Part shown: piece by piece, positions 125 through 64,000 of the stretch
Position numbering within the stretch: the first letter of the stretch is position 1
How the letters are laid out: every line of letters starts with the position of its first letter
Assembly (NCBI GenBank): GCA_977030845.1
Contig: OZ365115.1
Span: 7,564,001 to 7,628,000, forward strand
DNA length: 64,000 bases
Reading direction: 5' to 3'
DNA from: Fimbriosthenelais zetlandica
Taxonomy: Eukaryota
Translations under genes and position numbers: made by a program
Notes under the pieces: model-generated
Database searches by the model: none
What the model was told of the DNA's origin: nothing
Seen by the model: only the letters and a program-made list of their open reading frames with translations

Positions 125-2923
125 CTGAAATAACAGTTAAACATATTAATTAGTTATTGCTTAGAATAGTTTAGAAATTTAATAATCAATGGCAATATAA
201 TGATTATATTGATAATTCTAATAAGTTAGTAATTTAGACCAACATTAATACTATGGTACCTTAAATTGTTGAGAAGTTAAGATAGATCTACCTTTGGAGC
301 GAAAAAATCATCCAGTCCACCAAGTTCGACTAGAGCTCTGTCTGGGTTGTAGCCAAGATATTCTACATTGTATGTGAAAATTCTGTCACCCTGGAAAAAA
401 ACAAATAAGTCCGGCCCCCATTACTTAGTAATTAAATATTAAGGAGAGAACTGTTTAGAGAATAATTAAGAAAAAATAGGAATGTAAATCACGGTTGATC
501 ATAATGGCATTAAGTCCATTATCTTTAATTTTTTTAACGCCGAATACTAAAAAAACAGAATTATTAGTGATATTAATGATTTGTCACGCATACTTTGCAT
601 TGCACTATCACGCAGGAATATTAGACTAGCCTATAATGTACAATCCCCATAAATAGATACCGTGTACACGCCTCAATCAGAATCAATGACTGTTAAAATA
701 TTAATAGGTCAACTTAAGCATTAGAGTGAATCTCCTGGCATCGCTATGTTACACCTAATCAATAATGCAGTCAGTAGAGCTACAAGATCTGAGCTAGAGA
801 AAAACAACAGAAAAATGCATTTTTTTAATGCAACAATTGGGCCTATAGTTCTTACATAATTAAATTGATAGTTCTCACAGATTTTTTTTCTCATAAAATT
901 TGTTTTCGCTGAAGATAATAGAGAAGTCAAGGGTAAGGATGATATCTGGATATTGTAGCTATGGTATATATGCTAAGCCTTGGCACCTGGTAGTTAGCGG
1001 GTGTATATTATATATACAGGTAGGCCTATCATTGATTAATAGATCTCTCACTAAATGATTGATTTAGTGCAGTCTTTCCATGTAGAGGAGGAGACTCACC
1101 GCGCCTGGCCGTGGGTGGAGGTGGTCACCGGTCAGATGATCCAGTGGTATCACATTCTGAACAAGCCATTTTAATGTGTCAACAACAGAGGGAATAAATA
1201 AAATAAATATAACTCGCTTATATTTACAACATCAAAAACAGACAGTTCACTCCCCCCTCTCCCTCACTCACCATCTACAGGTACCTACCGATATATCAAA
1301 TCATAAATATTTTTGGAGGAATGTCAATATCTTTATCATTACCCGGTATTATAGATCAGAGGGGGATAAAATAATATTTTAATCGGTAATGTGGAGATGG
1401 CAATATAAGTCGAAAATAGATAATAAAACCTAGCCTAGTCATGCAGCCACGACCAGCACCAGTTGTTTAATAGTTGTTACGTAGCCTAATAGTTCACTCA
1501 AATTCTATGACTATTAGATTCACCAGACCAGGGGAGAATTAAGATGATTGTTATACTCACCGGATACCTCTCACTGATCATCCGTTTCAGCGTGGCTAAC
1601 TTTACAGGAGCGATGTCTTTACTTTCAACGAAGATTTTCTGATATTCCTCAGGGACGTCTTTCAGGAATGAAGGGCTCCGGAGCATGAACAAAGCTGAAT
1701 GAAAGAGAGGACGATAGTATGAGCAGAAATATCGGTTTTATCATTTAAAAAAAAAGATAATCAAACCTATCCTTATAACTGTACCACATTGGAAATATAT
1801 TTTGGAAGACAAAGGTAATACGCAAAAGGCAAACGGAAAAATAATCCTCCTGCGTAGAATTATGTTTCTTTTAATATGGATAAGTCAGAAAGAGAGGATG
1901 CCTACCATTGGGGTTGTCTACCCTGTAGGCGGCATGTAAGATCTCCATCTCTGTTACAGATAAGCCATTAACCCATTTATATTCATCAGCTACAGCTTCA
2001 GGTATCTCTTCTGGTCCAGGTACCCAACCCAATCTTTCACTGTCAACGAGAGAATAGATATCGCTAATAAATTTATGACAATAATTATGACAGGTTCTAG
2101 TTACTTGCCTATTTACAGTTTTAATAAAAATATAAAATCATGTTATATCTCCGTTAAATGAACTGCGTTCGAAAACAAAGTTCCCAGTAGGCCCTACTAA
2201 CCTTGTCATATTGACAAAGAAGGGCATAACATTGTCCGAGTAGCATCGGTCAATTTCCCCCAGACAAGCCCTGATTGTGCTCTCCGTATTGGTATCTTTG
2301 GGAACGCCCTTGAATGGAATACATGTATATCAATTATTTTAATTAGAAATTTACGATTTACCCTGGTATACAAATTCTTGAGTCCAATGATAAGGAAACA
2401 CCATGTAGGCCTAAAAGGTAAAATTATTTATCTTACCCATCTTAAATCACATTCTACCAGTTGTAGTCGCAGACTCTCACACCAGAGGCGCAAGTCTGGA
2501 AATACCTGGAAAATTAAAATAGCAATTATATCATTGATATATATCAATATAATTATTAGATTAAACGGTATACAAGTACGGAAAAAGGTCCAGGGTTTCT
2601 TTAATATATTTTTTAATTTTTCATTAATTCAAAAATTAGCCTGAGGGATAATTATGCCTGCCCGGTAGCTATAGATATAATAGGCCTACCTTCTTTACAA
2701 GGACCTCTCGTTCTTGATGGAAGTCTCTGAATGTAGAAGAAACAAAGATCCTCACTGTTCTCCAGCCTGTTCTCCGTACTACCAGGTTCTTTATTTTGGC
2801 CTTAGTTCCAGGCCTTTTACCTGTTGTCTTCCACACTCTGTCCCACGTGTCATTCACCTCAATGTAGTGAGGGTTGTTGGAGAATTCATTGGGAGCCAAG
2901 TTTCTGGAAGCTCCACATCCCAT
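1..2923 (-). CDS. DUF4062-domain protein, TEP1/NWD/TTC41-related (5' part only; continues past left edge)
   Basis: Spliced exons 2690-2923, 2437-2505, 2202-2308, 1906-2039, 1561-1694, 292-390 and 1-124 join in frame with GT-AG ends. Translation includes WRTVRIFVSSTFRDFHQEREVLVKKVFPDLRLWCESLRLQLVECDLRWGVP...CLGEIDRC...ERLGWVP...SVTEMEILHAA, the DUF4062 signature of TEP1/NWD1/TTC41-type proteins. Downstream NACHT/TPR or WD40 domains are outside the window, so the subfamily cannot be fixed. Confidence 0.85.
292..390 (-). CDS. DUF4062 gene exon (GDRIFTYNVEYLG...FFAPK)
   Basis: ttttttccag acceptor, AAG|gtag donor; 99 nt. Confidence 0.85.
1100..1156 (-). other. Candidate 57-nt in-frame cassette exon of the DUF4062 gene (NVIPLDHLTGDHLHPRPGA)
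   Basis: GC-rich island in an AT-rich intron, bounded by cttgttcag and GCG|gtgagt; phase 0-0, no stop. Confidence 0.45.
1561..1694 (-). CDS. DUF4062 gene exon (LFMLRSPSFLKDVP...ISERYP)
   Basis: ctttcattcag acceptor, CCG|gtgagt donor; 134 nt. Confidence 0.9.
1906..2039 (-). CDS. DUF4062 gene exon (ERLGWVPG...EMEILHAAYRVDNPN)
   Basis: ttgacag acceptor, ATG|gtagg donor; 134 nt. Confidence 0.9.
2202..2308 (-). CDS. DUF4062 gene exon (GVPKDTN...PFFVNMT)
   Basis: ttcaag acceptor, AAG|gttagt donor; 107 nt, ends phase 2. Confidence 0.85.
2437..2505 (-). CDS. DUF4062 gene exon (VFPDLRLWCESLRLQLVECDLRW)
   Basis: ttttccag acceptor, TGG|gtaaga donor; 69 nt. Confidence 0.9.
2690..2923 (-). CDS. DUF4062 gene, first coding exon (MGCGAS...EVLVKK)
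   Basis: Acceptor tccacag directly precedes the ATG; donor AAG|gtagg; 234 nt, phase 0. Confidence 0.85.
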
Positions 2924-3179
2924 CTGTGGACATGGAAAAATGTTTTTTTTTGTAGTAAGGGCATGCCATTTGATTTAGACCTATATCAAGGAACCATCTT
3001 AAAAGTTCCCAAGTTCTTTTTCTAAATTTAAGACTTTTAATTTGGAGCCAGACCAATAGGCACTGCCTCACACTATATCTTCAACTAAAGTTGGTCAACT
3101 AAAGTTGGTCGTGTAATACGAATTTCGTGGATCAATTCGTTGACTAAATCTGCCCACTGTGACTAGGCCTACCAACACA

Positions 3180-14096: not shown

Positions 14097-14267
14097 TCAG
14101 AAGGTGAGTGTTGAGTCGTCCCACTCCAGTTCGCGGTCTTTCACTTTCTCTGATTCTTCCTCTGAAGATTCTAGCTCGTCGTGGTAACTGCTAGCATCGT
14201 CATCGTCTGTGTCCGAGTCCTCAGGACGCAGCACGTTAGGGTCGCGCTCGTCCTCGTACATGGCCGC
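14097..14267 (-). CDS. CLSTN1: Calsyntenin terminal exon (acidic tract, [11 protein letters not shown])
   Basis: ttttcttctccag acceptor; TGA at 14097-14099; 171 nt. Confidence 0.96.
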   Translation of the reverse strand, partial: AAMYEDERDPNVLRPEDSDTDDDDASSYHDELESSEEESEKVKDRELEWDDSTLTF

Positions 14268-17200
14268 CTGGAGAAGAAAATAATAACTAATCACTCAACT
14301 AGCCTCATGGGTCTCAGATCCATTTAGAACATATCTCAAGAAGGAGTTTTGCAATGGGCATGCACGAGAGTGCTTAACAGTGGAAAAAAGCTTAAGTTCT
14401 AATGTCCGGCCCACACAGAGGCGATTAGCCCAATCACACCGAATGATTGTAATTTTGTCAGTGGTTAGCCTGAGCTAGGTGTAAAGGACTGTTAAAATTA
14501 CAAGCATTGGGTGCGACTAAAAATATAGTATCGCGCTTCTATCGCTTGGAGAATCGCCTATATATGTGCCCCAAGCTTAAGTACTATAATAGACATTTAA
14601 AAGCAACGTTCTATGATTTATATTTATTGTGACTGACCTCTTGATCCATAGGGTTGACAGTGATGGTAAGAGCTGAGTTGTCCCATTCCATCTCTGGCCT
14701 CTCGTCTGGAGGCATCACCTGTGATCTATGGTGGGCGGCACGAATACGGATCACACCCAGAACGATCATGAAGAGCAGGAATCCCACACACACCACCACG
14801 ATCACCGTCACACCCACGCCTGCAACAATGACAAACCAATAATTTAAAGGGATACGAAACACTTTTAAAGGGATATGAAATACTTTTAAAGGAATATGAA
14901 CTACTTTTAAAGGGATATGAAACACTTTTAAAGGAATATGAACTACTTTTAAAGGGATATGAAACACTTTTCAAAGGATATGAAACACTTTTATAGGGGT
15001 ATGAAACATCTTTAAAGGGATATGAAACACCTTTAAAGGGATATGCAGGGCCTAACACTTAGGCCTACAATACATTAAGTAGGGCTTTATTTGTAGGCTG
15101 GCATGAGAATGGTACATTGAAAGTGACTTACTAGAAGCATTGGCGTGGCGCTTGAGGTTGTTAGGTGGTTGAAGAGTCTCAAACTTCTTGATAGGCTCAA
15201 CATTAAGGGGAGCCTTACGATGAGCCTGGGGTACTGATGGGTGGTGGATTGTGTGGATAACGTCCAACTGTGGAAAAAACAATAATGCATACATTTAACC
15301 TACAGTTCTATCACTTTATAATTTCAAATATATTTCAATGCAACTTTTTCAGAACTACAGTAAATTTACAGGATTAAAAGCTCCACCAATCCATGAAAAA
15401 ATGACGCTGTATGTTTTATGAATTAACCAAGTTGTATAATTTGAGATGACCGTCTTAGTAATTCACCTTGATGGAGAACTCATTAGAGATGAATCGTCCG
15501 TTCAGTTCTGAGCAGGTCAGAGTGAATGTACGTGAGTTGAAGTCCTGTGGTTTGCTGCTGAAGTAACGGATCTGTCTCAGCACCAACTCATAGTTGTACA
15601 CCTTATCAGCTCCTGTAACACACAAATTATACATTATAATCAACATTTCAACAACTAATGGCGAAAATAATTTAATGCAAAGGACATAAGAAATGCATGA
15701 GTCCAATAGGAAATATCTCCCATGAAACTAATGCCTAAAGGCCAGAATGCCAGGAGCAATTAAAGTTCCGAGCTTTAGACATGATTAATAACATTATGAG
15801 TGAGATTTTAGGGAATCAACTCACCGGAGACGATGACCCCCTGGTCACTGATGGAGCCTTCCAGGCCGAGCTCCTCGAGGAGTCGCTCGGGCAGCACCAT
15901 GTGCTCGGTGTTGGGGTCGAGTTTGGGTTCAGTCCTCATGATACATGAATCAAGGCGTTGATCAGTCGACATCTGGAAGCCGTCCGCGTCCTTGCTGGAA
16001 TCTTCGGAAGATTGTTCTCTGGATTTCTTATCATTGTCCTTGAAACAAATTAAAGTACCATTTAGTTACCATCCAACTACACGAGTATTCTAAATATCAT
16101 CCGCTAAAGTTACTCCAAAGTCAATTTTGGCAGTCTCAGATTCCTGGACCCCTTTTAAACTCGCACACTGCACTATAATAAACTCACATTATTTAACCGA
16201 CAATCGAAGTAAATGCATTATCAGCGTAGGAAGACGAAAAGGCATTATTGTTCCCCTTCAGATATATCTGTCTACGCCGACTTGTTTTTGGATATCTTCT
16301 CATTTCGGCTCATATTGCAAGGCAACCTTTACAAGGCCGGAAATGAAAGATGCCCGAGGTGGGGCTAACATAGCTGGGGCCTGTATCACGAACTATTCGT
16401 TTTTCATTAAGAAAAGGCTATGTTTCATATTGCAAGTATTTAATATAAAGACGATGAGTGAATGTGGCTCACCTTCTTGTCGGTCTCCTCGTTCTCTTCA
16501 CGCTCTTTACGTGTCTGTGACATGATGGTCACGTCGCGGAAGATCTTTTCACCTTGGCTCACTTCGTGTTCTGTACGGGCCAGGTGGTCAGATCCAGCCA
16601 GCGTGATGATGGGGCGCTCAGCCTGCGTGACCACGATCAGGGTGTTCATGTCCTGAACCTGGATGCTCCGTCCACTCTCACACCTACAGTCACAACGTCA
16701 TTATCATAGCGCGTCCATGTAGAAAACTCAAATCATTTATATTAAACCATAGCTATTTTAATCTAAATAGATTTATTCCCCATACTGCACATTTATAAGA
16801 CATTTATCAGACCATTGTACAACTATTAGCTCATCCATTTTTGTACAATGCCCTGATCTTGATATATAACACCTTTTTTTCCTTTTAGCAATTTGCGTTA
16901 ATTATTTTCATAATCAATATATATTTTTTTTAATGTTGATGAATCCGAAATACAGCTATTCATTCATTTTTTTAAAACAGAAATCAGTAGAAATATTTCA
17001 CAATTGTTAACGTAACTTTCTTGGATAAAGCTGTAGAATCAGGCAAAATTGGCACTAAAAGGCTTCATAATTATGTGAGTTAGACGTGAGGTAAGAAGTA
17101 GCGTTGAATAAAACTTACGTGACATCAGTCCTGATTTTGAGGGAGCGATGTCCAGGTGTAGGGAAGCTGCGGGTGTTAACGTAGCCAATACGGCGAACCA

Positions 17201-32200: not shown

Positions 32201-35200
32201 AAAAATTCAATAAAGAAACATAAAGATTAACAAGAACCATGTTCACCATTTTCAGATCTTCTGAGCTTTAGTTGTAGGCCTGAGCTGGTCTGTCATATCA
32301 TATATGAAATGAGAATAGCAAGGATGAATTATTTGTTTATAAGACATCATTTTCATATGTTCTGAGCGGTATACTTTAGATGCCTCATGAAATGAATTGC
32401 AAGACAGATCTGTTTCTTTGGGCGATATTTTAATAAGTACTGTTATCTTGTGTGGAAGCAGGGGCTCATAATAAGCAGCTCCTTCTCAGACTCTCGGTTG
32501 ACAGATCCAATTGGACTTTTTACATCTCATGCCTGATTTCCTGCGAGAGATTTTACTCGCGTTTTTAAAGGGAGACAAAGCAAAGTTTTAATAATCCCAT
32601 TATCTTAGAGAGACGTTCAATACCCGACCAAGGAGACAGAGAAGCAAGAGTTTATAAAAGACGTGCCGGCTACAATGAAAGATAGACACTTTTAAAACAC
32701 TGACGTTAATGTGTCAAACGAGACAATTGCATGTCTGCACAGACTCTCACCATCTCTCAAAATGCAATGTGCAATAACCGTCTCGCAAGATCTCTCTGGC
32801 AACTTCAATTCCAACTCAGCTCCTGACAAATCCTTTCCATCACATTGTAAATTGCTGTGAAGTTTTAGCACTTGAAATCTCGAGAGATTTTTGTCAAAAG
32901 TGATCTCAATTTGTCCCTCAAAGTCTCAATTCTGATACTTTCAGGAACGTCAACAACACAGATGAAAATTGTTGAGTGCATTACAGAATATTGTTCCTTT
33001 GAGAGGAGAAGTTTTGAAAACTCTAGCAATTGATAAATGTGTTAACGCTTTCAGGATCCAAATATAATATCCATAGAAAGATCTATAACACGAACTTCTA
33101 CAAATGCTTACAATTTTAGAAGGCATGGGTCATACCCTTACCCTTTCTTTCCACCTCCTAGCAAACAAGTCTGTAAAAGGAGTGGTATATTTGCATTTGT
33201 GTCTGGTGTAGGGAGTTCCAGCCCCAAGGAGGACAAACTAGAGTATAGATTTCTTGTATCGATGTCTTTCATCGTTTTCCCCCCTGAGCACATGCAGTCC
33301 CTGCTCCTCCATACACAAACCAAAAGATGTGCCCAGCCTTAATACTGGGCGCTGATTGCTCTAAACTCCTTACTGAGGGCCACTAGACGGAGGGCTTAAG
33401 TTAATTTACTGAGCAGCATACACCTAGATAGCAGTGGTGCGAGGTCTCAGGAGTAACTATATCTGTAATATACAACAAGGCCAAAGTGAATAAAGGAGAG
33501 CTGGTAGAAGCGTCCAAGAGCTGGATAGACGCAACCGTGAGCTGGTAGAAGCATCCGAGAGCTGGATAGACGCAACCGAGAGCTGGATAGACGCAACCGA
33601 GAGCTGGATAGACGCAACCGAGAGCTGGATAGACGCAACCGAGAGCTGGATAGACGCAACCGAGAGCTTGATAATTATAGAAACAACCAAGGTCTGGATA
33701 GAAGTATCCAAGAGCTTGATAGAAGCATATAAATAAAGCTAGTCCCGCAGACATCCACATATAAAACGAACATGCGAACATGCGAGCGAGGGGACCATAT
33801 ATATAGGCACAAAGAACCATGGATTGAACTTCACGATTAAATTGATCCAGACTGAATAAGGACATTCTAAGGAATCAAAAGCATGACATTTAGATTTTAT
33901 TTCCCTGAGTTCTAGAGTGATATATTGGGATGAGGGAAACTGTATGTGGAGGGAAGGGATGGATGTGGGGGATACATTGTACATGTTTACTGTATAGGGC
34001 GAGGACCGAGCATGTAATAAAGTTAATATTACCACCAGCCCTCCCCATGCAACAAGCTCATTAATACCTCCACTACATACCTCTCTCAGATTCCAAACAA
34101 CCAGTGGCTCAATGCCACAATACCTAAAACAGCTTTAATAGCTTTTTTTGGCAAGCAAGTCACATCCAAGTCTGTAATTAAGGTAGGGTCATTTCTAGCA
34201 GGAGAAATAGACAAAAAGACTTCCTCACGACGAATGATAAGAAAGAAAATTATCTTATCTAAGAGTACAACGTCATGCCAACAGTTGTCATGCCAACGGA
34301 GCATGATGGAGTATTCTTGAGGCGTTATTTTTACCGCTTTTTCTGATGTAGAAGAAGACGAGGACGTGACAAGGCCTAATGTGGGGTTGGATAATATTTC
34401 GCTGAACTGATCTTTGCCGTGGGGCGTGAGAGAATGAGCCTGGACAATTAAGCGCCAATGCGAACAAGGCGGTAACAAAAATAGCCAGAAAATTTATGTC
34501 GTCATCGAGCGAGCTCTGGGCAGAGGATTTGATTCTGTTGCTATTCATCATAGAATCTACCCAGCCGCCGACACCTGGTATTGAGAGTGGAATGAAATCT
34601 AGCATGGAACGGCAAGACGGACGACTGGGCTTATTAGCAGTTACACAAGCAACTGAAGGAATAGATCAAATTGGCTGTCCACGTTGATTGTAGGACTGTT
34701 TTCATTATTCCTCCTGAGCAACTCAATAGCTCAGACTTGTGCTCATAAAAACGGGCGGATATCTGCTCCACAGGCTCTGATTTTCTGCTTATTATTCGAC
34801 CATGAAAAGTTCTGCTGCCACGTAGAATGGGAATGACATGTATCTTCTCTTTCCCCGCATAGGTACATAGAGCTATTTTACCAGAGCAAAAATAACGGAA
34901 AATAACCCAACAGGAGCTGGAATGTCATGGAGGGAATTTGGGATGAAATGAGCCACTCAGGTGAAATTTCTTTAGCAGGGAAATGAACAAATTTATAAAT
35001 ACAAATGTTTATAAGTGATCAAATAGTAAGCATGACAATGTCAATTAACCTATTAGGTTACAAAAACATTTCTGAGACCAATATTTCACCATAGAAACAT
35101 GTAGCCCGATTATAGGTGCAGTGAGTATAAGTATGTGTGAGGTCTTTGGCACTCGGCTTAAAACAAGCCTTTAATATCCACCAGTATAAGACTACAAGGA

Positions 35201-56200: not shown

Positions 56201-58358
56201 CAGCATCTCTAGCCGAACACTAGAAGTCGCCATTACATTTAATTTTGAACAATGAAGCGAGGGACGACACTGTGTTACACGATCGCAGGGAGCAATACAA
56301 GATTATTGTGTGAGCCACTCCAATTAATTGGCAATTTAATCTAACTCTCGGCATCTCAGGCAGGCAAATGACATGAATTCTCATTATGCCCAAGGTCTCT
56401 ATGGACAATTATCGAATTCAACTCCATGTCGTGGGCTGGGAAGATGGTGGTGTAGATTTTTACATTAGAGTACCATTTATATGCGCAAAGTGTTTCTACA
56501 AGCATCTGAACTTTTGACCTGAGAAACTTCTCCAAAGGCATGTAAGGCAGGTCGAAAATGGAAAACAGAAAAAAAATGTTTGTCTGGAAATGAGAGTAAG
56601 TGACATTAGATGCGCATTGAAACTCTGGATCAAATGGCCCACTCGAGGGAGCGATTTGGACAAATGAAACGGCTGGAAAAAAGGTTCATATTATCGATAC
56701 AGTCTGGTTGCTATGACAACATAATCCACCCGATCTGATATCCCCATACAGGCTTCACTAATCCTGAAGGGGAAGGATGTCAGTTCCCCATATATAGCAA
56801 ACAAAGGATTTTGCTAATAGCTTTACATGATGCAAGTCGTATGCAAACTAATCAAATAAATGTATATGACCGTAGGCTCTGAAAATGAAACCAATGTTCG
56901 GAACTTAACAGAAGCTTAACAAGATATATCAAGATATAAGACAAATCCAGGTAATAGTCTTGGGAAAGATTATAAAGATACATATAATTGAACAACACAG
57001 CACAAATGTCTTCAAGCAAAATGATGTAGAATATCTTGTTATAAAAGGAAATGATCCAAGAATTAAGGTACATAGGATTGGGAAGATTTTTATGAAAAAT
57101 TCAGTGAAATATAAGTTTCATGTGGGAAGATTTGAAGTTGGAAGGGTGTCAAAATGAGATAGATAAAGGGAGAGATGCTTACCTTTCCACCCGACCTTGC
57201 AAGCCTCCTTGACCTTGACATTAATCATGACTTTGTCCGAGGTCCTGGAGTGCTGCGGGCCTCCACAGTCCTCTACTCGTACCTCCAGAATGTAGTTATG
57301 ATTCTTAGAGTAGTCCAATGGCTCCGTGTTGTACAGCACACCTGCGACAGGAATAAGTCAATAATATTAATACAAACCGTCAAAGTGGCAGACAAAATAT
57401 ACCTTTTACCAACTATTCCCAGATATCTGGTATTAAAATCACGTAAATATTGACATATATTCTTCCAGGTAAATACTTAAACATTAGTCCTAAGATGTTT
57501 TCAGAGCGAATTATAAATAGAAGTTCCTAGGCTTTTCATTTTTATTTTGCATGTGAAAATGACATAAAAGATTTCGGTGAAAAGCTTCACTCACCATCAC
57601 TGTCTATCTTGAATGGTACATCCGGGGTGAGGATGTGGTAATGACAGATTGTGCTGTAATCTGTGGACCCGTCCTTGTCTTCCGCACGGAGAAGTAGGAT
57701 CTCATCGAAAAGTTGACCCTCAGCAACCTCCACCAAATAGGAATCCCGCTCAACATGGGGAGCAAACTCGTTCACATCACGCACCTCAATATGGACCTGC
57801 TCCCTGTGGAAGTGGAGTTAGGTGTTAATTTACATCACAATTCAATGGAATAGTAAAAAAGATAGTGATATTATAGACCAAGTTAGTGAATAGTTCAGGA
57901 ATACTTGATTTCCAACACTAAGAAAAAATATTATTGTCGAAATATTTTAATGAGCAACCAATGGATAGCCTAATTTCGCCAATAATGAAAATAATAAATG
58001 TTTAAGTTCTTCTAATTAATTATATAGGCTAACTTTGTGTGGCTTGTTTTGCTGCCTTATCTTAAAGGTCAGACATTTCCAGTATAGTGCCCCAGTAAGA
58101 GTAGAGGCGCCTGGATGCCACTCAAAACACTAAGGTAAAGGGTAGCCAGAAGGCACATTAAGACACACCTCATAGCATGTTTGCCACTCTCGCAGTCATG
58201 GGGTGCGATCTCAAAGTTGTACCGGTGTCTCCGCTCATAGTTCAGTTGATAGCCAGGGGCGAGGACGATTTTGGCTTTTCCCGTTTGCCTGTTCTGTAGC
58301 ACCACTTTGAACGGCAGTTCGCTGTGTGATTTATAGATTGTGAAACCACAAATCTCAT
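14097..58358 (-). CDS. CLSTN1: Calsyntenin (alcadein/CLSTN family); 5' exon(s) outside the window
   Basis: 15 exons join in frame (2693 nt, ~896 aa). They encode two cadherin repeats (EICGF..., [16 protein letters not shown]), a LamG/LNS domain ([46 protein letters not shown]), a TM helix, and a cytoplasmic tail with [15 protein letters not shown], an acidic tract and a terminal [10 protein letters not shown]. The symbol denotes the family; invertebrates usually have one calsyntenin, so CLSTN1 vs 2/3 orthology is not resolvable. Confidence 0.97.
14388..14582. mobile_element. Palindromic MITE-like element / long imperfect hairpin in the last calsyntenin intron
   Basis: Inner inverted repeat 14432-14462 vs 14488-14518 (25/31 complementary); outer cacacagaggcgatt vs aatcgcctatatatgtg; aagcttaagt direct repeats at 14388 and 14573. 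Confidence 0.55.
14638..14819 (-). CDS. CLSTN1: Calsyntenin exon: transmembrane helix plus first W-acidic/NP motifs
   Basis: cattgttgcag acceptor; GAG|gtcagt donor; 182 nt; [26 protein letters not shown]...[19 protein letters not shown]. Confidence 0.96.
14843..15045. repeat. 21-bp minisatellite (~9.5 copies, ttttaaagggatatgaaacac)
   Basis: Visible tandem array; it explains the spurious repetitive ORFs 14611-14967 (N-terminal part) and 14726-15058. Confidence 0.95.
15132..15267 (-). CDS. CLSTN1: Calsyntenin exon (LDVIHTIHH...KRHANAS), juxtamembrane stalk
   Basis: tttttccacag acceptor; CTA|gtaagt donor; 136 nt. Confidence 0.92.
15467..15612 (-). CDS. CLSTN1: Calsyntenin exon ([16 protein letters not shown]...NEFSIK)
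   Basis: tgttacag acceptor; AAG|gtgaat donor; 146 nt. Confidence 0.95.
15825..16038 (-). CDS. CLSTN1: Calsyntenin exon (DNDKKSRE...QGVIVS)
   Basis: tttgtttcaag acceptor; CCG|gtgagt donor; 214 nt. Confidence 0.9.
16473..16683 (-). CDS. CLSTN1: Calsyntenin exon (CESGRSIQV...EETDKK)
   Basis: gactgtag acceptor; AAG|gtgagc donor; 211 nt. Confidence 0.93.
17119..17270 (-). CDS. CLSTN1: Calsyntenin exon ([10 protein letters not shown]...KIRTDV)
   Basis: tctttttcag acceptor; CAC|gtaagt donor; 152 nt. Confidence 0.95.
17465..17619 (-). CDS. CLSTN1: Calsyntenin exon ([16 protein letters not shown]...MQTGM)
   Basis: ttttctccag acceptor; ATG|gtaagt donor; 155 nt. Confidence 0.95.
17868..17997 (-). 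CDS. CLSTN1: Calsyntenin exon (VRLYIDGK...GACWQ)
   Basis: ccgcttccag acceptor; AAG|gtgagt donor; 130 nt. Confidence 0.95.
20761..21180. repeat. 30-bp minisatellite, 14 copies, with 60-bp higher-order alternation
   Basis: Core ttcccaggctttccatgacc with alternating ggggg-aaacc and ctggg-aatca spacers. Confidence 0.97.
21219..21397 (-). CDS. CLSTN1: Calsyntenin exon (MNRHHYSLY...VSIDFPQ)
   Basis: tctgtattttcag acceptor; CAG|gtgagt donor; 179 nt. Confidence 0.95.
21470..21760. repeat. (ATGG)n microsatellite with duplicated purine-rich spacers
   Basis: 20 perfect ATGG copies at 21581-21660; gggttggagggtgagtgg(g/a)agggaggtt occurs twice. Confidence 0.97.
29501..29527 (-). other. Candidate 27-nt in-frame calsyntenin micro-exon ([10 protein letters not shown])
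   Basis: Acceptor cttgtatgtatattctcag, donor CTG|gtgagt; phase 1-1, no stop. Confidence 0.4.
29667..29687. repeat. (GGT)7 microsatellite
   Basis: Directly visible. Confidence 0.9.
30776..30995 (+). repeat. G-rich low-complexity tract (GGGGT-like)
   Basis: Many runs of 3-5 G separated by short loops. Confidence 0.9.
33496..33726. repeat. 21-bp minisatellite (gagagctggatagacgcaacc), 5 perfect copies at 33557-33661 plus degenerate flanks
   Basis: Directly visible; it explains ORFs 33401-33865, 33447-33659 and 33457-33711. Confidence 0.95.
35910..36176 (-). CDS. CLSTN1: Calsyntenin exon ([12 protein letters not shown]...LLCNSDGE), start of LamG domain
   Basis: tttgctaacag acceptor; AAA|gtaagt donor; 267 nt; followed by a 14,512-bp intron. 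Confidence 0.95.
36964..37155 (-). CDS. CLSTN1: Calsyntenin exon ([11 protein letters not shown]...QRKIC)
   Basis: gtttttcag acceptor; GCG|gtaagt donor; 192 nt. Confidence 0.95.
39126..39283 (+). repeat. G-rich tract including a G19 homopolymer (39253-39271)
   Basis: Directly visible. Confidence 0.9.
57183..57341 (-). CDS. CLSTN1: Calsyntenin exon ([10 protein letters not shown]...CKVGWK)
   Basis: cctgtcgcag acceptor; AAG|gtaagc donor; 159 nt; followed by a 20,027-bp intron. Confidence 0.95.
57595..57803 (-). CDS. CLSTN1: Calsyntenin exon ([15 protein letters not shown]...FKIDSD)
   Basis: cttccacag acceptor; ATG|gtgagt donor; 209 nt. Confidence 0.95.
58169..58358 (-). CDS. CLSTN1: Calsyntenin exon (EICGFTIYK...GKHAM), cadherin repeat 1
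   Basis: ttctgctttccag acceptor; AG|gtgtgt donor; 190 nt, phase 1 to 2. Confidence 0.93.
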
Positions 58359-59942
58359 CTGGAAAGCAGAAATCAATAAGAGCATTTAAATCTCATGTAA
58401 GCAAAGAAAAAAATACTTATCCTCATCCATTCCACTTGTTGTGAAGCGGCACTTGAGACTAAATCCAAAAGGATGGGCTTTTATGATTTTTTCCATTTAC
58501 TGATAGACTTGAATCGATCTTAATTGATACCCACTTATGCCCCATATTATGCCAGATGAGGGCCATTTAAGCATGTATTACCATTTTAATGGAATATCAA
58601 TACCAATTTTAGAACATTTTCCAAAGCCCTACCACCATTCCTATTGGCCTCAGTAGTATTACTTAAATTACCAGAAAGATATTCCAAATAATGTTCATAA
58701 TAAATCCGTGAAGGGACCCATTAGTGAATCCGGATAAATTTCAGTTTGAAACGCCTTGTACAAAACAGCTCAGACTTTTGAGAGAAATTTTAAGACAGAT
58801 TTGGACCTTATTTATGGACAGGAAACCGTGTTACTGTCTCTTAATATGGGAAAAATAATTGAGGCTCCCTTGGCTTGAGACCCTTGTACGACCCGAAATG
58901 ACCAGAGATGGGCAGAGTGGGGAGATTTTAAGACATTTCCCCCTTAAATACTCCAGCATCCAGCTGGCTTCACTGTCATGTAGGATCTAAACACAGCGGT
59001 GTAAATCAGCCGGCAAGCATAACTAAGTCCATATCTGTCATCCCTTTTTCCCCGCAGCGCTATTTTTCTCCATTTATAATGCATGGCGCGTGCAATCTTG
59101 CTCGTACTCTCCTCACGTGGGCTCAGCCTCGTTCTGAGGCCGAGGCACATCCTACAAGGCCGGGTTTCATTCCCGTTAATACAAGCCTGGCGCAGGAGAC
59201 ACTCTCATAAATAGAGTTGTCATTTCACATCATCAATAACTAGAGGCTAAAGGCGGGAGATGGAGAGACGACCTGAGCTGCTCGCTCAATGGATGAGTCA
59301 CTCAAGCATTACACAGCACTGGGTAACATAATCATCAAGGTTCATATATACCATACCAAACATATCCTAACAATGCTAAATATCAAGCACTCAACACTCA
59401 AACAGTACTACTTTCCAAACTCTACCTATTACTCTAAAATTAGAAATTCCCAGTTTTTCATAATGTCCTAGGAAGAAATGTTAAAATATTTTAAATTCTA
59501 CAAGTAGATGCACAAGGGGGGGTGATATATTAAACCTACATTATGATTCACCTATGACTAGACCTACTCCACTTAGACAAAGAAATTTAAAACTAGAAAT
59601 TTAAGACTTTCCAGTTTAGATATCTACAGTTACTGAATACTGGCAAACGCCGATATGTTCTCTCAACCAACTATAGTGGCCTCCCATTGACACTATGCAT
59701 ACTAATGGTAGATCTTGAGATCTAAATGTTGCAATTTCCCAAGGGCCATTACCTCCTAGGACTGCAGTCAACATTAAGAGCCTGTGTACAATCCAAAAGA
59801 GCTATACTACTTACTTCCTTAAAACAGCACAAGGCAAGTCTAAATTCTCCTCATCTAATGACTCTAAGATTTGGCTACAAAGTTCCACATTTATATCTTA
59901 TTTTTAAAGCCAATACAGATATTTTTTCTAGATGTCACATAC

Positions 59943-59972
59943 TTTCAAAAGTGGTCCATATTCTTCCATCCC
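59943..59972 (-). other. Candidate 30-nt in-frame calsyntenin cassette exon (xGG-DGRIWTTFE-N)
   Basis: Strong acceptor tttcctctcttcacattttgttccag, donor AAA|gtatgt; open in the phase-1 frame required by the downstream exon. Confidence 0.5.
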
Positions 59973-62900
59973 CTGGAACAAAATGTGAAGAGAGGAAACC
60001 TCATGGGTATATAGAAGGAAATAATTGCTAATGCGCTAAATACATATTCTTAATGGCATGACATTTAACATCGTAGAAGCATGAGAGACTATTTTTGCAC
60101 TTCAACTGTAAGGTTCATGTTTTACAGGAGAAATGCAGACTCGACATTCCTCTTATACCTTCTAGCTTCTGACATTCATTTTTAGCCAACAACAAAGTGA
60201 AAATATTATTGAATATTTCATGCTCTGCCAAGATTTTCTGCTTATAGAGAAAGTACACTGATGTACAATCGTGAATATTAAAACCATAGTCAATCCGGCA
60301 TGGGAAATGACATCAGAATTTGAAATTTAAACAGAGCAGATAGGGATGAGATTATTGACAACTTTGGTAATACTGTTGCCTTGCAAATGAGGTTTAGAAA
60401 AAAGTTAATGACACTTCTTTTCACTTGTAGTTCAGATTCACGCCTCCCTGAAGCAACCTTTTTAAAAGACTGCCATAAAAATGCAAAACCTATTTTCAGG
60501 CTGGCTAACATAAACCCCAGTGCACCAAAAAACCAATGGCGCATTCGCCAGCCATAATCAAATGTCCTTGGTGCACTTGGCAACTCTGCACGCCCCCAGA
60601 CAACCCAATCCAGTCAACTCTGACTAACGGAGAATCGATATTTCATAGAAGACACAGAGGCCTTCCTCAGAAATTCTCCGCCGTAACGGAGCCAATGGAA
60701 CGAGGTGGAGATCCATAGAAAGAGGCTTTTGTGGTTCGTGTAAATATAGGATAAAAAGTGGGGAGCTGGGGCTGAGATCGAGGTATAGCTTGGGTGTGTG
60801 AGCGGGGGACGGGAGGGAAGAAAGGTTTTGTATATAGTGTAGGTTCAGACATTAATGGGAAGAGGCGGAGGAGGGGGGAAGGGGAAGGCTTCACCTGTAT
60901 CCTGTTTGTGATAACAGGATGGGTGAAGTACTCTCAATATGTACACTGCTTTATACAGACTAAACGCACCTGGGCCTTATGTTAATGGCTTAAAATGCAG
61001 GTGAGGTATTGTGTAGGTGACATCCCGTTTGAATAGATAGGATTTAGGGAAGGAGTAAGGAGTAAGAAGAGAGACGGGCAAAGAAACAAGAAGGAGAACT
61101 AGAAAACTAAAGTAGCAGGGAAAAAGCTACAGACAGACGGATACATCCCAATAGACTAGCTATAAAGCAGGGAGGACAATGTATCAGGATGTAAGAGAGG
61201 GCGGGGGCAGCGTTAAAGTGGGAGAAGGCAATGTTTATTAATTTATAGAGGCAATCTCAACTTAAAAGCCTACTTGACGGAGAGAGAGGTCGAACAGGTT
61301 GAACGGAGTGGGGGAGTTGACAATTTAGATAAAATACATGTGGGACGTGAATATAACCTCTAAACTCGGCATTATATTCGTGGACTGAATCCGATAGGAC
61401 TAGATCACAAGGGGGAGCTGCAATTTATATTTTCGTCACGTATAAAAAAGATTTCACCACTCATCCGGGTAGCATTATGGACCATGTCGAACGATTATTC
61501 TTTCAAGTATGAGGAAAGGACAAAAAAGCGGAGGGGGCGTATGAACTAAACAGGGGTGTAGATTTAAGCCGGAATTGACCATCACCATCTACTACTACTC
61601 GAATTGGGAGCTAAATTCCAATTTCCTTTCAAAATCAGAATGTTTTTGAAAGGATAGATATTTAACGTACAAATTTTAATGTAAGTTAATCCAACACTGG
61701 ACCTCTAATGGGAATGGAGAATGACATTTCCAGTACATTTCCCCACATCCACGTGTACCCCCCCCCCTTATATAGACCCCCGCCCCTTTTCTCGGTTGTA
61801 TAGATCTCTAGCTCACCTGAGGACCATCTGTCGGTGCTTTGTTATGCCACATTCCAGACAGACCCAGTCATAAGTCAACTGGTGTGTGGAGGCAGTCACA
61901 ACACCTCTATATCCTACACACCCGCTCCTCCACTACCCTCATACATACATGTCATTAACTCACCCCCTCAACCATCACACCCGCCTCTCATTTAACGCAT
62001 AATTTCAATTTCAACAGACGAGAATGATTCATGTACAAGTTCACCTCTTCTCACATCCAAGATCATCTCTTGAAATTCCAAATGACTTGTTTTTCACTTT
62101 AGAGTGAACTCCCCTTGTGTCATCAATCATATTATGCAGTCTGAGCTATCTGCCGCATACCAGAACATTTTTCGCTTCGTATTTCTCATTTTTTTCATCT
62201 CCTTGACACATCTTCACGCGTGTGAAGCAGACAGTAGGATCGTCCATCAAGTTGTAAGCTACTTCTCACAGCCTGTAACTTCATACCACTGTATATATCT
62301 ACAGTATATACCTGTCCATCGCCGCCATGTCCACTCATACCTTTAGAAACCTGACTCTCTGCTATTTTTACTCCAATATTCTATTGTGTATTTATACAGA
62401 AATATATTTTGGATATGATGCAAAAATAATGCAGAAATAATGGAGCATAATCAGCATTGCTTTAAGGAAAACCTCGCTGAGCAGATGGCTCATTTGTACA
62501 TTTAAGCCTCCACAGATAATTTCGAGATAGATTTAATATAAAATAATGGTAGAGACCATACATTAGTTTACAATGTACAAAAAATCCAGTTTCCAAAAGG
62601 ATTCATATATCCAAACTAGTATCCATAAACGGGAAAGGAATCAAATTAGAAGGCAAATGTTATGGTTTGAGAGAAAAGGGGGCAATATTGGACCTTGAAG
62701 CCAATTGATTTGATTTTACCAAGTGGCTATTCTCTACCCTACTACATCTTCACTGGTCCATGTCAAGGATCTGAGATGATCTGGGTCAGGTGTAAAAAGA
62801 ACCAGCATACTGCTGATCTAAAATCCACGAAGCTGTGTCCCCACAAGTGGGTCAAAGTACGGTATAACAGGTAAAGAGAGCCAGTGGGATTCAGTGATGG

Positions 62901-64000
62901 GGAAGATTGGAGACAGGTGCCAGGTGCGGTTTTCAGAATACAGGAAATTAATATTCCGATATATAGTGAGGTCTATATTTGATTTTCTGTATATGATCAG
63001 ATCCCTTTTACAGGAGGTAAATAGATAGATGTATAACCATGAGAACAATTAACATGGGTAACAATTCATAATCGGGAAATTTATACTTGTATTAGTTAAT
63101 TTCTGTGATAAATATTGCCAAGAAGATGTATCTATATGAACACTACTGTAGTACAGGGTGCATCAAACTGTAGGTCTGCCATTATACATTGTCCCAACTG
63201 CTATCATTTTTAATACTACATGTAGCTGATAGCGTTTTAAAGCACCAATTTGATCCCGGGCCAGATTTAATGCTGTATCGCATGATGGCTTCTCCTATAA
63301 CGGTGAACAGGAGAGAGCAGTTGGTGGACATACAGTCTCCATGTGGAGGTTTAACCTAGACTAAATATACTAGTATCAGGTGGACTAATATAACCTGGCC
63401 GCACTAAACCACTTTTTCTAACCAGGCAACAGAAATATTTATTACCCTGCCAACGGGATGCCAATCAGTCGATCAAATATTCTATTGATTATCAATTGAA
63501 TCAATTGAATAATGATCAAATCAATTGATCAAATATAGATAATATAATACTGTGTTAATTGAACTGGTTTTCGGACGTTAAAACAACCGGCTCAGTGTGC
63601 CGTCGACCTCAGTAAAAACCAGTGTATTTTGTTGGTTTTACATGATACCAGACACTAGTATATATCTTGGTGTATTGGGGGGAGCCTGCGGCACCATTAA
63701 AAGTCACCCGGGCTCTAGGTATGACAATATATCACCAGGTCGGGCAGGGAATGTGACTTTCATATATGACACATGTAAGGCCTGGGGCCCATATAACCAA
63801 CCACACAACTCTATAGCTTACACCTATGTCAGTGTTCAGTAGAGTAACAGATACAGCAGGCCCCTGGTTCAGTTGATCGATCAATTTTGGCCACTCATAA
63901 AAACCTTTTTTCCAACTTGTAAATCATAGAACTCTGAACTGTTTTAAATTGAAACGTCATAATTTAAAATAATAAAACCGTCCCGTTAAAGATCTAAAGG

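What the first reader, a model, noticed from the sequence alone, without database searches (positions are those of the whole stretch)
59943..59972. 30-nt cassette exon candidate at the site of the vertebrate CLSTN1 10-aa insert
Seen: in the intron immediately before the EICGF exon, tttcctctcttcacattttgttccag|GGGATGGAAGAATATGGACCACTTTTGAAA|gtatgtg has an excellent pyrimidine tract. It is exactly 30 nt and open in the required phase-1 frame (xGG-D-G-R-I-W-T-T-F-E-N-EICGF). Established: human CLSTN1 isoforms (alcadein alpha1, 971 aa; alpha2, 981 aa) differ by a 10-aa insert just before GEICGF in cadherin repeat 1. Inference: an equal-length alternative exon at the same intron position in an invertebrate, either deep homology or convergent gain. 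The peptide sequences are not obviously similar.
Basis: partly seen in the sequence, partly recalled or inferred. Interest (0 to 1): 0.7.

Follow-up and report, generated by a model that had tools for sequence, protein, structure and literature searches.

The report
Likely decoy exon in calsyntenin intron
A 30-base stretch that looks like a small optional exon sits in an intron of an invertebrate calsyntenin gene, but no relative has an insert there and RNA could not be checked, so it is most likely an unused look-alike.

Summary
The sequence is as described. On the minus strand, 59972..59943 is a 30-nt block flanked by an excellent acceptor (17/20 pyrimidines, CAG|G) and a moderate donor (AAA|GTATGT). 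It lies 1.6 kb upstream of the calsyntenin EICGF exon. It is open in the phase-1 frame, and that phase is confirmed at the orthologous intron of a relative (G|AT). Its splice signals are as good as those of the gene's 11 placed real junctions. Chance gives about 0.2 such frame-preserving blocks per 64 kb.

Nothing beyond the motif supports use. About 20 transcript-derived calsyntenins of the nearest clade carry no insert before (E)ICG(Y/F). Neither do the 38 aligned invertebrate N-termini, nor the isoform pairs of the 13 species where the motif could be placed (18 compared, all differing elsewhere). One relative's orthologous intron is only 172 nt. There is no UGC motif near the acceptor, no GCAUG downstream, and the only consensus branch point is at −14.

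RNA evidence could not be obtained. No run was listed, and the run-finding tool then closed.

My estimate is decoy pseudo-exon about 0.7, real lineage-specific cassette about 0.2, and deep homology with the vertebrate Alcα2 insert about 0.02. Interest is low until junction reads exist. The scan has not found this on other DNA.

The parts
59943..59972 (-). The 30-nt candidate cassette. In phase 1 it would add G-DGRIWTTFE and change the junction Asp to Asn.
   Evidence: contains a GAAGAA purine run.
59973..59998 (-). Acceptor-like signal TTTCCTCTCTTCACATTTTGTTCCAG.
   Evidence: 17/20 pyrimidines, the only yTnAy branch-point match is at -14, an AG lies at -29, and there is no TGC within 86 nt upstream.
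59937..59942 (-). Donor-like signal GTATGT, preceded by AAA.
   Evidence: 5 of 7 consensus positions. The gene's real donors score 5-7.
59809..59814 (-). Second donor-like site GAA|GTAAGT. With the same acceptor it would make a 158-nt exon that is out of frame and carries stops.
58359..59942 (-). Intron segment between the candidate and the next real exon.
   Evidence: no coding similarity.
58169..58358 (-). Real calsyntenin exon (D/N)[23 protein letters not shown]..., cadherin-like domain 1, which starts in phase 1 with AT.

Best explanation
The block is most likely a pseudo-exon: a strong acceptor-like tract and a moderate donor-like hexamer that happen to lie 30 nt apart inside a long (at least 5.6 kb) intron of a calsyntenin gene. 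It would be either unused or spliced in only at noise level. The gene's normal product joins the upstream exon (outside the window, ending in phase 1, probably with G) directly to the exon at 58358, giving ...G-D-EICGF as in all relatives. Shown here: the sequence, its frame, the strength of the signals relative to the gene's real sites, and the absence of any insert in relatives. Inferred: non-use in this species.
For: All transcript-derived calsyntenins of the nearest clade (57-65% identical to the window's exons) read ...L.G(D/G)(E/D)|(I/V)CGY with no insert, including every member of their 90% clusters. The 38-sequence N-terminal alignment has no insert of about 10 aa at the site. In 18 invertebrate species with several annotated or assembled isoforms, the isoforms differ at other places; the motif could be placed in 13 of them, and none has an insert there. 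In relative L001 the orthologous intron is 172 nt and has no room for a cassette. L002 has no similar block in 2.1 kb upstream, but it does have its own chance 30-nt open AG..GT block. A degenerate scan for a DGRIWTTFE-coding stretch in JGI metagenome contigs found nothing. Cis-signals expected for regulated neural microexons are missing: no TGC within 86 nt upstream, no GCATG within 300 nt downstream, the only consensus branch point is 14 nt from the AG, and the donor mismatches at -1 and +4. Openness of a 27-nt frame is expected by chance, and 2 of 3 frames are open.
Against: The acceptor (0.85 pyrimidine) is better than the median real acceptor of this gene (0.65). The donor score of 5/7 equals the weakest real donors. 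At these thresholds chance gives only about 0.2 frame-preserving blocks per 64 kb, or about 0.02 in the 5.6 kb of this intron that is visible. The block contains GAAGAA, a classic purine-rich enhancer; this rests on my own knowledge. The frame fits the conserved phase-1 intron. The insertion point lies in a surface loop of variable length. Assembled transcripts and cluster representatives favour major isoforms, so a minor or lineage-specific isoform would be missed. No RNA of this species was examined.
Confidence: 0.7

Rival explanations
1. It is a real, lineage-specific, alternatively spliced 30-nt cassette exon. It would lengthen the A-B loop of cadherin-like domain 1 by 10 residues (G-DGRIWTTFE, Asp to Asn at the junction). 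That would be convergent with the vertebrate Alc-alpha2 insert and might tune an extracellular interaction.
For: The splice signals are as good as real ones. The chance expectation in this intron is low. The block preserves the frame in the phase confirmed in an orthologue. It contains a GAAGAA run. The site is a loop two residues before strand 67-73 in a confident model, pLDDT 89.7, and that loop varies by up to 7 residues among invertebrates. Calsyntenins of other invertebrates do use small alternative segments elsewhere.
Against: There is no transcript evidence at all. No relative has an insert here. No UGC or GCAUG motifs are present, the branch point is short and the donor is weak at -1 and +4. 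The coincidence of size and site was noticed after scanning all introns.
Confidence: 0.2
2. It is a deep homologue of the vertebrate CLSTN1 30-nt exon, retained from the bilaterian ancestor.
For: It has the same length. It apparently sits at the same codon before EICG(F/Y), though the vertebrate exon structure comes from memory and was not tested. Vertebrate Alc-alpha2 does have 10 extra N-terminal extracellular residues (PMC3414480).
Against: The peptides are not similar. Annelid, mollusc, brachiopod, nemertean, arthropod, hemichordate and unnamed sequences show no insert at this site. The orthologous intron is 172 nt in one relative.
Confidence: 0.02
3. The acceptor is used, but unproductively. 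Paired with the GTAAGT donor at 59814 it would make a 158-nt stop-containing poison exon, or the site may serve another transcript.
For: A second donor, GAA|GTAAGT, lies 158 nt from the acceptor; that exon shifts the frame and has stops.
Against: There is no RNA evidence. No Rfam family and no coding similarity is found in the region.
Confidence: 0.05

Closest known systems
Vertebrate CLSTN1 / alcadein-alpha splice variant Alc-alpha2 (10 extra residues)
   Same: [quoted passage not shown] From memory, it sits directly before GEICGF, which corresponds to the junction studied here.
   Different: The vertebrate exon is expressed and annotated, whereas this one has no RNA support. The peptides are unrelated. 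No intermediate invertebrate lineage shows an insert.
Intronic pseudo-exons (decoy exons)
   Same: An AG...GT pair with good consensus in a long intron, with no conservation and no transcript support.
   Different: The signals are stronger than typical chance pairs in this window, and the block happens to preserve the frame.
Neural microexons dependent on SRRM4 / the eMIC domain
   Same: It is short, preserves the frame, sits in a neuronal adhesion gene, has a strong UC-rich pyrimidine tract and falls in a surface loop.
   Different: There is no UGC motif next to the acceptor. At 30 nt it is at or above the usual size limit. Tissue regulation is unknown.
Annotated small alternative segments of invertebrate calsyntenins (Lingula 8 aa, Lineus 6-7 aa, scallop VREK, Mytilus 41 aa)
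   Same: They show that invertebrate calsyntenins do undergo small frame-preserving alternative splicing.
   Different: All of them lie elsewhere in the protein, in the laminin-G region, juxtamembrane region or cytoplasmic tail, and none before ICG(Y/F).

Membership tests
Expressed alternative cassette exon | Junction reads into both splice sites alongside skipping reads | not testable with these tools
Expressed alternative cassette exon | Splice-site signals comparable to real exons of the gene | tested here: met
   Acceptor 0.85 against 0.45-0.95 for real sites; donor 5/7 against 5-7.
Expressed alternative cassette exon | Length divisible by 3 and open in the phase of the host intron | tested here: met
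   30 nt, and DGRIWTTFE is open. Phase 1 with G|AT is shown at the orthologous intron of L001. The window's own upstream exon was not seen.
Expressed alternative cassette exon | Presence in transcripts or conservation in related genomes | tested here: not met
   The relatives available are only 57-79% identical, so nothing is known for close relatives.
SRRM4/eMIC-type neural microexon | UGC motif close upstream of the acceptor, after a UC-rich tract (feature taken from my own knowledge of the literature) | tested here: not met
   The nearest TGC is 86 nt upstream.
SRRM4/eMIC-type neural microexon | Neural-specific inclusion | not testable with these tools
   No RNA data were reachable.
Orthologue of the vertebrate CLSTN1 30-nt exon | Same intron position and phase | tested here: inconclusive
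   The invertebrate side is shown. The vertebrate exon boundaries are recalled from memory only. The paper confirms only 10 extra N-terminal residues.
Orthologue of the vertebrate CLSTN1 30-nt exon | Peptide similarity, or presence in intermediate lineages | tested here: not met
   No insert in any invertebrate examined. The peptide has no match in JGI contigs.
Recursive-splicing exon | Exon start regenerates a GT donor after joining the upstream exon | tested here: not met
   The block starts GGGATG, so no GT is regenerated.

The most novel reading that the evidence does not exclude
A lophotrochozoan (possibly annelid) calsyntenin has independently evolved a 30-nt alternative exon. It would lengthen the same A-B loop of cadherin-like domain 1 by the same 10 residues as the vertebrate Alc-alpha2 variant, which would point to a recurrent functional need to tune that loop.
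Probability: 0.17. Interest if true: 0.5.

Novelty: not a real feature. Interest (0 to 1): 0.15.

Why it matters
If the exon were used, it would be a neat case of convergent or retained alternative splicing at one loop of a synaptic adhesion protein. It would also single out that loop, whose role is unstudied even in vertebrates, as functionally tunable. As it stands, it mainly shows how convincing a chance exon can look. Good splice signals, an open frame and a suggestive coincidence with a vertebrate isoform are not enough without RNA or conservation.

Tried and rejected
1. RNA runs. A search with 57500-60200 listed none.
2. Same-species contigs in JGI metagenomes. An exact 26-mer from the EICGF exon start gave 0 hits. 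A degenerate DGRIWTTFE-coding pattern also gave 0 hits.
3. Upstream exon inside the window. Six-frame reading and low-stringency tblastn with 15 N-termini found nothing. The weak match LDEENLDLP at 59858-59832 (E 0.5 among 15 queries) has no YHG motif, the wrong phase and a stop just upstream, so I rejected it as chance.
4. P0042 appeared to have a 20-residue insert before ICGY. I read it as a gene caller running through a short in-frame intron (GGT GAG ... TTAG|AT), not as an insert. This is an inference.
5. Repeat or transposon origin. The region has no second copy in the window.
6. Structured RNA. There are no Rfam matches anywhere in the window.
7. Solved calsyntenin structure. None was found by sequence. 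Foldseek only confirms tandem cadherin domains.
8. Identity of the organism. A paper search for the L002 assembly accession gave nothing, and the Atlas taxa were uninformative.
9. Folding the inclusion isoform itself. This was not attempted, because a spliced sequence is not an accepted input.

Full report
**Observation**

The window carries a calsyntenin gene on the minus strand. Thirteen coding exons run from 58358 down to the stop at 14100 (…[10 protein letters not shown]), placed by tblastn with full-length relatives. Eleven of the junctions between them were resolved.

The finding is at 59972..59943 on that strand. It reads TTTCCTCTCTTCACATTTTGTTCCAG|GGGATGGAAGAATATGGACCACTTTTGAAA|GTATGTGA. 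The block is exactly 30 nt. Its third frame reads DGRIWTTFE without a stop.

The next real exon starts 1,585 nt downstream at 58358 with AT GAG ATT TGT GGT TTC. It therefore needs one base from the preceding exon. If the block were included, the junctions would read x|GG (Gly if x is G), then D-G-R-I-W-T-T-F-E, then A|AT (Asn), then EICGF.

No calsyntenin exon lies between 59973 and 64000. The upstream exon is therefore outside the window, and the intron is at least 5.6 kb long.

**Is it more than chance?**

An open 27-nt frame means nothing, and two of the three frames are open. The weight rests on the splice signals.
- The acceptor has 17 of 20 pyrimidines and CAG|G.
- The donor AAA|GTATGT matches 5 of 7 consensus positions.
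- For the 11 real junctions I could place in this gene, acceptor pyrimidine content is 0.45-0.95 (median about 0.65) and donors score 5-7.

The candidate is therefore as good as a real exon of the same gene.

At the candidate's own thresholds the window holds two such blocks of 9-90 nt on the minus strand and none on the plus strand. First-order Markov simulations give 1.15 per 64 kb, of which 0.2 are frame-preserving and open. With slightly looser thresholds the counts are 7 and 2, with 2 and 1 frame-preserving.

For the 5.6 kb of this intron that is visible, chance expectation is about 0.02-0.1. That figure flatters the candidate.

**Phase of the host intron**

I could not see the window's own upstream exon. 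A relative on a marine metagenome scaffold (L001, 79% identical in this exon) has both exons. The upstream exon ends …ATT GGA G|gtcagt at L001:1225. The intron is 1226-1397, and the next exon starts AT GAG ATA TGC GGC TAC.

The intron is therefore phase 1 and splits a GAT codon as G|AT. This matches the …G-D-E-I-C-G-Y seen in nearly all transcripts of the clade.

**Comparative evidence**

- A full scan of 1.84 billion representative proteins with the EICGF exon gave 59 relatives.
- A search with the Owenia fusiformis calsyntenin gave 120 listed full-length invertebrate proteins.
- The nearest to the window (57-65% identity over about 900 residues) are unnamed proteins on 3-9 kb intron-free contigs, which means they are transcripts.
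- All of these, and all members of their 90% clusters, read …L-x-G-(D/G)-(E/D)|(I/V)CGY with nothing inserted.
- An alignment of 38 N-termini shows that the segment just before ICG(Y/F) varies by up to seven residues. None has an insert of about ten.
- I compared isoforms in 18 species (nemerteans, a brachiopod, scallops, mussels, abalones, insects and a scorpion). They differ at other places: around residue 320 or 400-415, at 676, 928 or 954, near the N-terminus in a mayfly, or by an N-terminal truncation in the scorpion. In the 13 species where the ICG(Y/F) motif could be placed, none has an insert before it.
- The orthologous intron is only 172 nt in L001, which leaves no room for a cassette.
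- A second relative (L002, an NCBI assembly contig) has 2.1 kb of upstream intron with no similar sequence. It does have an unrelated open 30-nt AG…GT block of its own, which is a reminder of how easily these arise.
- Scans of JGI metagenome contigs for the exon start and for any DGRIWTTFE-coding stretch found nothing.

The limits are clear. No relative closer than about 80% was available, and assembled transcripts favour major isoforms. Deep homology is thus poorly supported, but a private exon is not excluded.

**Cis-elements**

- There is no TGC within 86 nt upstream of the acceptor. From my own knowledge of the literature, SRRM4/eMIC-dependent microexons typically have UGC close to the acceptor.
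- There is no GCATG within 300 nt downstream.
- The only yTnAy match in the last 70 nt puts the branch adenosine at −14, with an AG at −29.
- The donor mismatches U1 at −1 and +4.
- In favour of use, the block contains GAAGAA, a classic purine-rich enhancer (my own knowledge).
- The same acceptor could also pair with GAA|GTAAGT 158 nt downstream. That would give a frame-shifting exon with stops.
- The block does not regenerate a GT at its start, so it is not a recursive-splicing exon.

**Where the insert would sit**

An AlphaFold2 model of residues 1-270 of relative P0063 is confident (mean pLDDT 89.7). It matches tandem cadherin EC domains in the PDB (E about 1e-14).

The split codon corresponds to D65. 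It lies in the long coil between strand 33-39 and strand 67-73 (ICGYTLY), two residues before the latter. An insertion there is structurally plausible. This is consistent with the length variation in the alignment, but it proves nothing about use.

**The vertebrate comparison**

[quoted passage not shown] The placement of those residues directly before GEICGF, and the phase of that intron, I know only from memory and did not test.

**RNA**

The first search for RNA runs listed none. No statement about expression in this species can be made.

**Verdict**

I take a prior of one or two percent for a real small cassette in a given intron of a neuronal adhesion gene. The splice signals give a likelihood ratio of roughly ten. 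The comparative and motif evidence is mildly negative.

On that basis my estimates are:
- about 0.7 that this is an unused pseudo-exon;
- about 0.2 that it is a real, lineage-specific cassette convergent with the vertebrate one;
- about 0.02 for deep homology;
- the remainder for unproductive use of the acceptor.

Noticed in passing
window 29501-29527 (minus), intron between exons ending 35910 and starting 21397: This is the other first-stage candidate (27 nt, ctcag|GGGAAATGG...GCTG|gtgagt, open in all three frames). It lies in the intron that splits ...CNSDGE|(K)MNRHH. Lingula anatina isoforms X1 and X2 differ by an 8-residue segment at exactly that junction (CNSDGE-IDYTSPSE-DMNRHH against CNSDGE-NMNRHH), and Tubulanus isoforms differ by GE there. 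That candidate therefore has a precedent that mine lacks.
   Followed up: partly
L001:1103-1397 compared with window 58359-64000: The orthologous phase-1 intron is 172 nt in the marine metagenome relative but more than 5.6 kb here. The gene as a whole spans more than 50 kb, with introns of up to 20 kb.
   Followed up: partly
window 20700-21900, 33400-33870 and 14730-15060 (minus-strand reading): Long in-frame-looking tandem repeats (HPSI..., PGHGKPG..., ALGCVYP..., SYPFKSV...) lie in introns right next to real exons. They produce long spurious open reading frames and are probably minisatellites.
   Followed up: no
window 1870-2980 (minus): Open frames here include ...VRIFVSSTFRDFHQEREVLVKKV..., which from memory resembles the N-terminal DUF4062-type module of NACHT/TPR-like proteins. 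This would be a second gene downstream of calsyntenin. It was not searched.
   Followed up: no
window 59858-59815 (minus): A short open stretch SLDEENLDLPCAVLR is followed by a perfect GTAAGT. It weakly resembles the ELDLPILARDK part of the upstream exon of one relative (E 0.5). I judged it chance because the phase is wrong, there is no YHG motif and a stop lies just upstream.
   Followed up: yes
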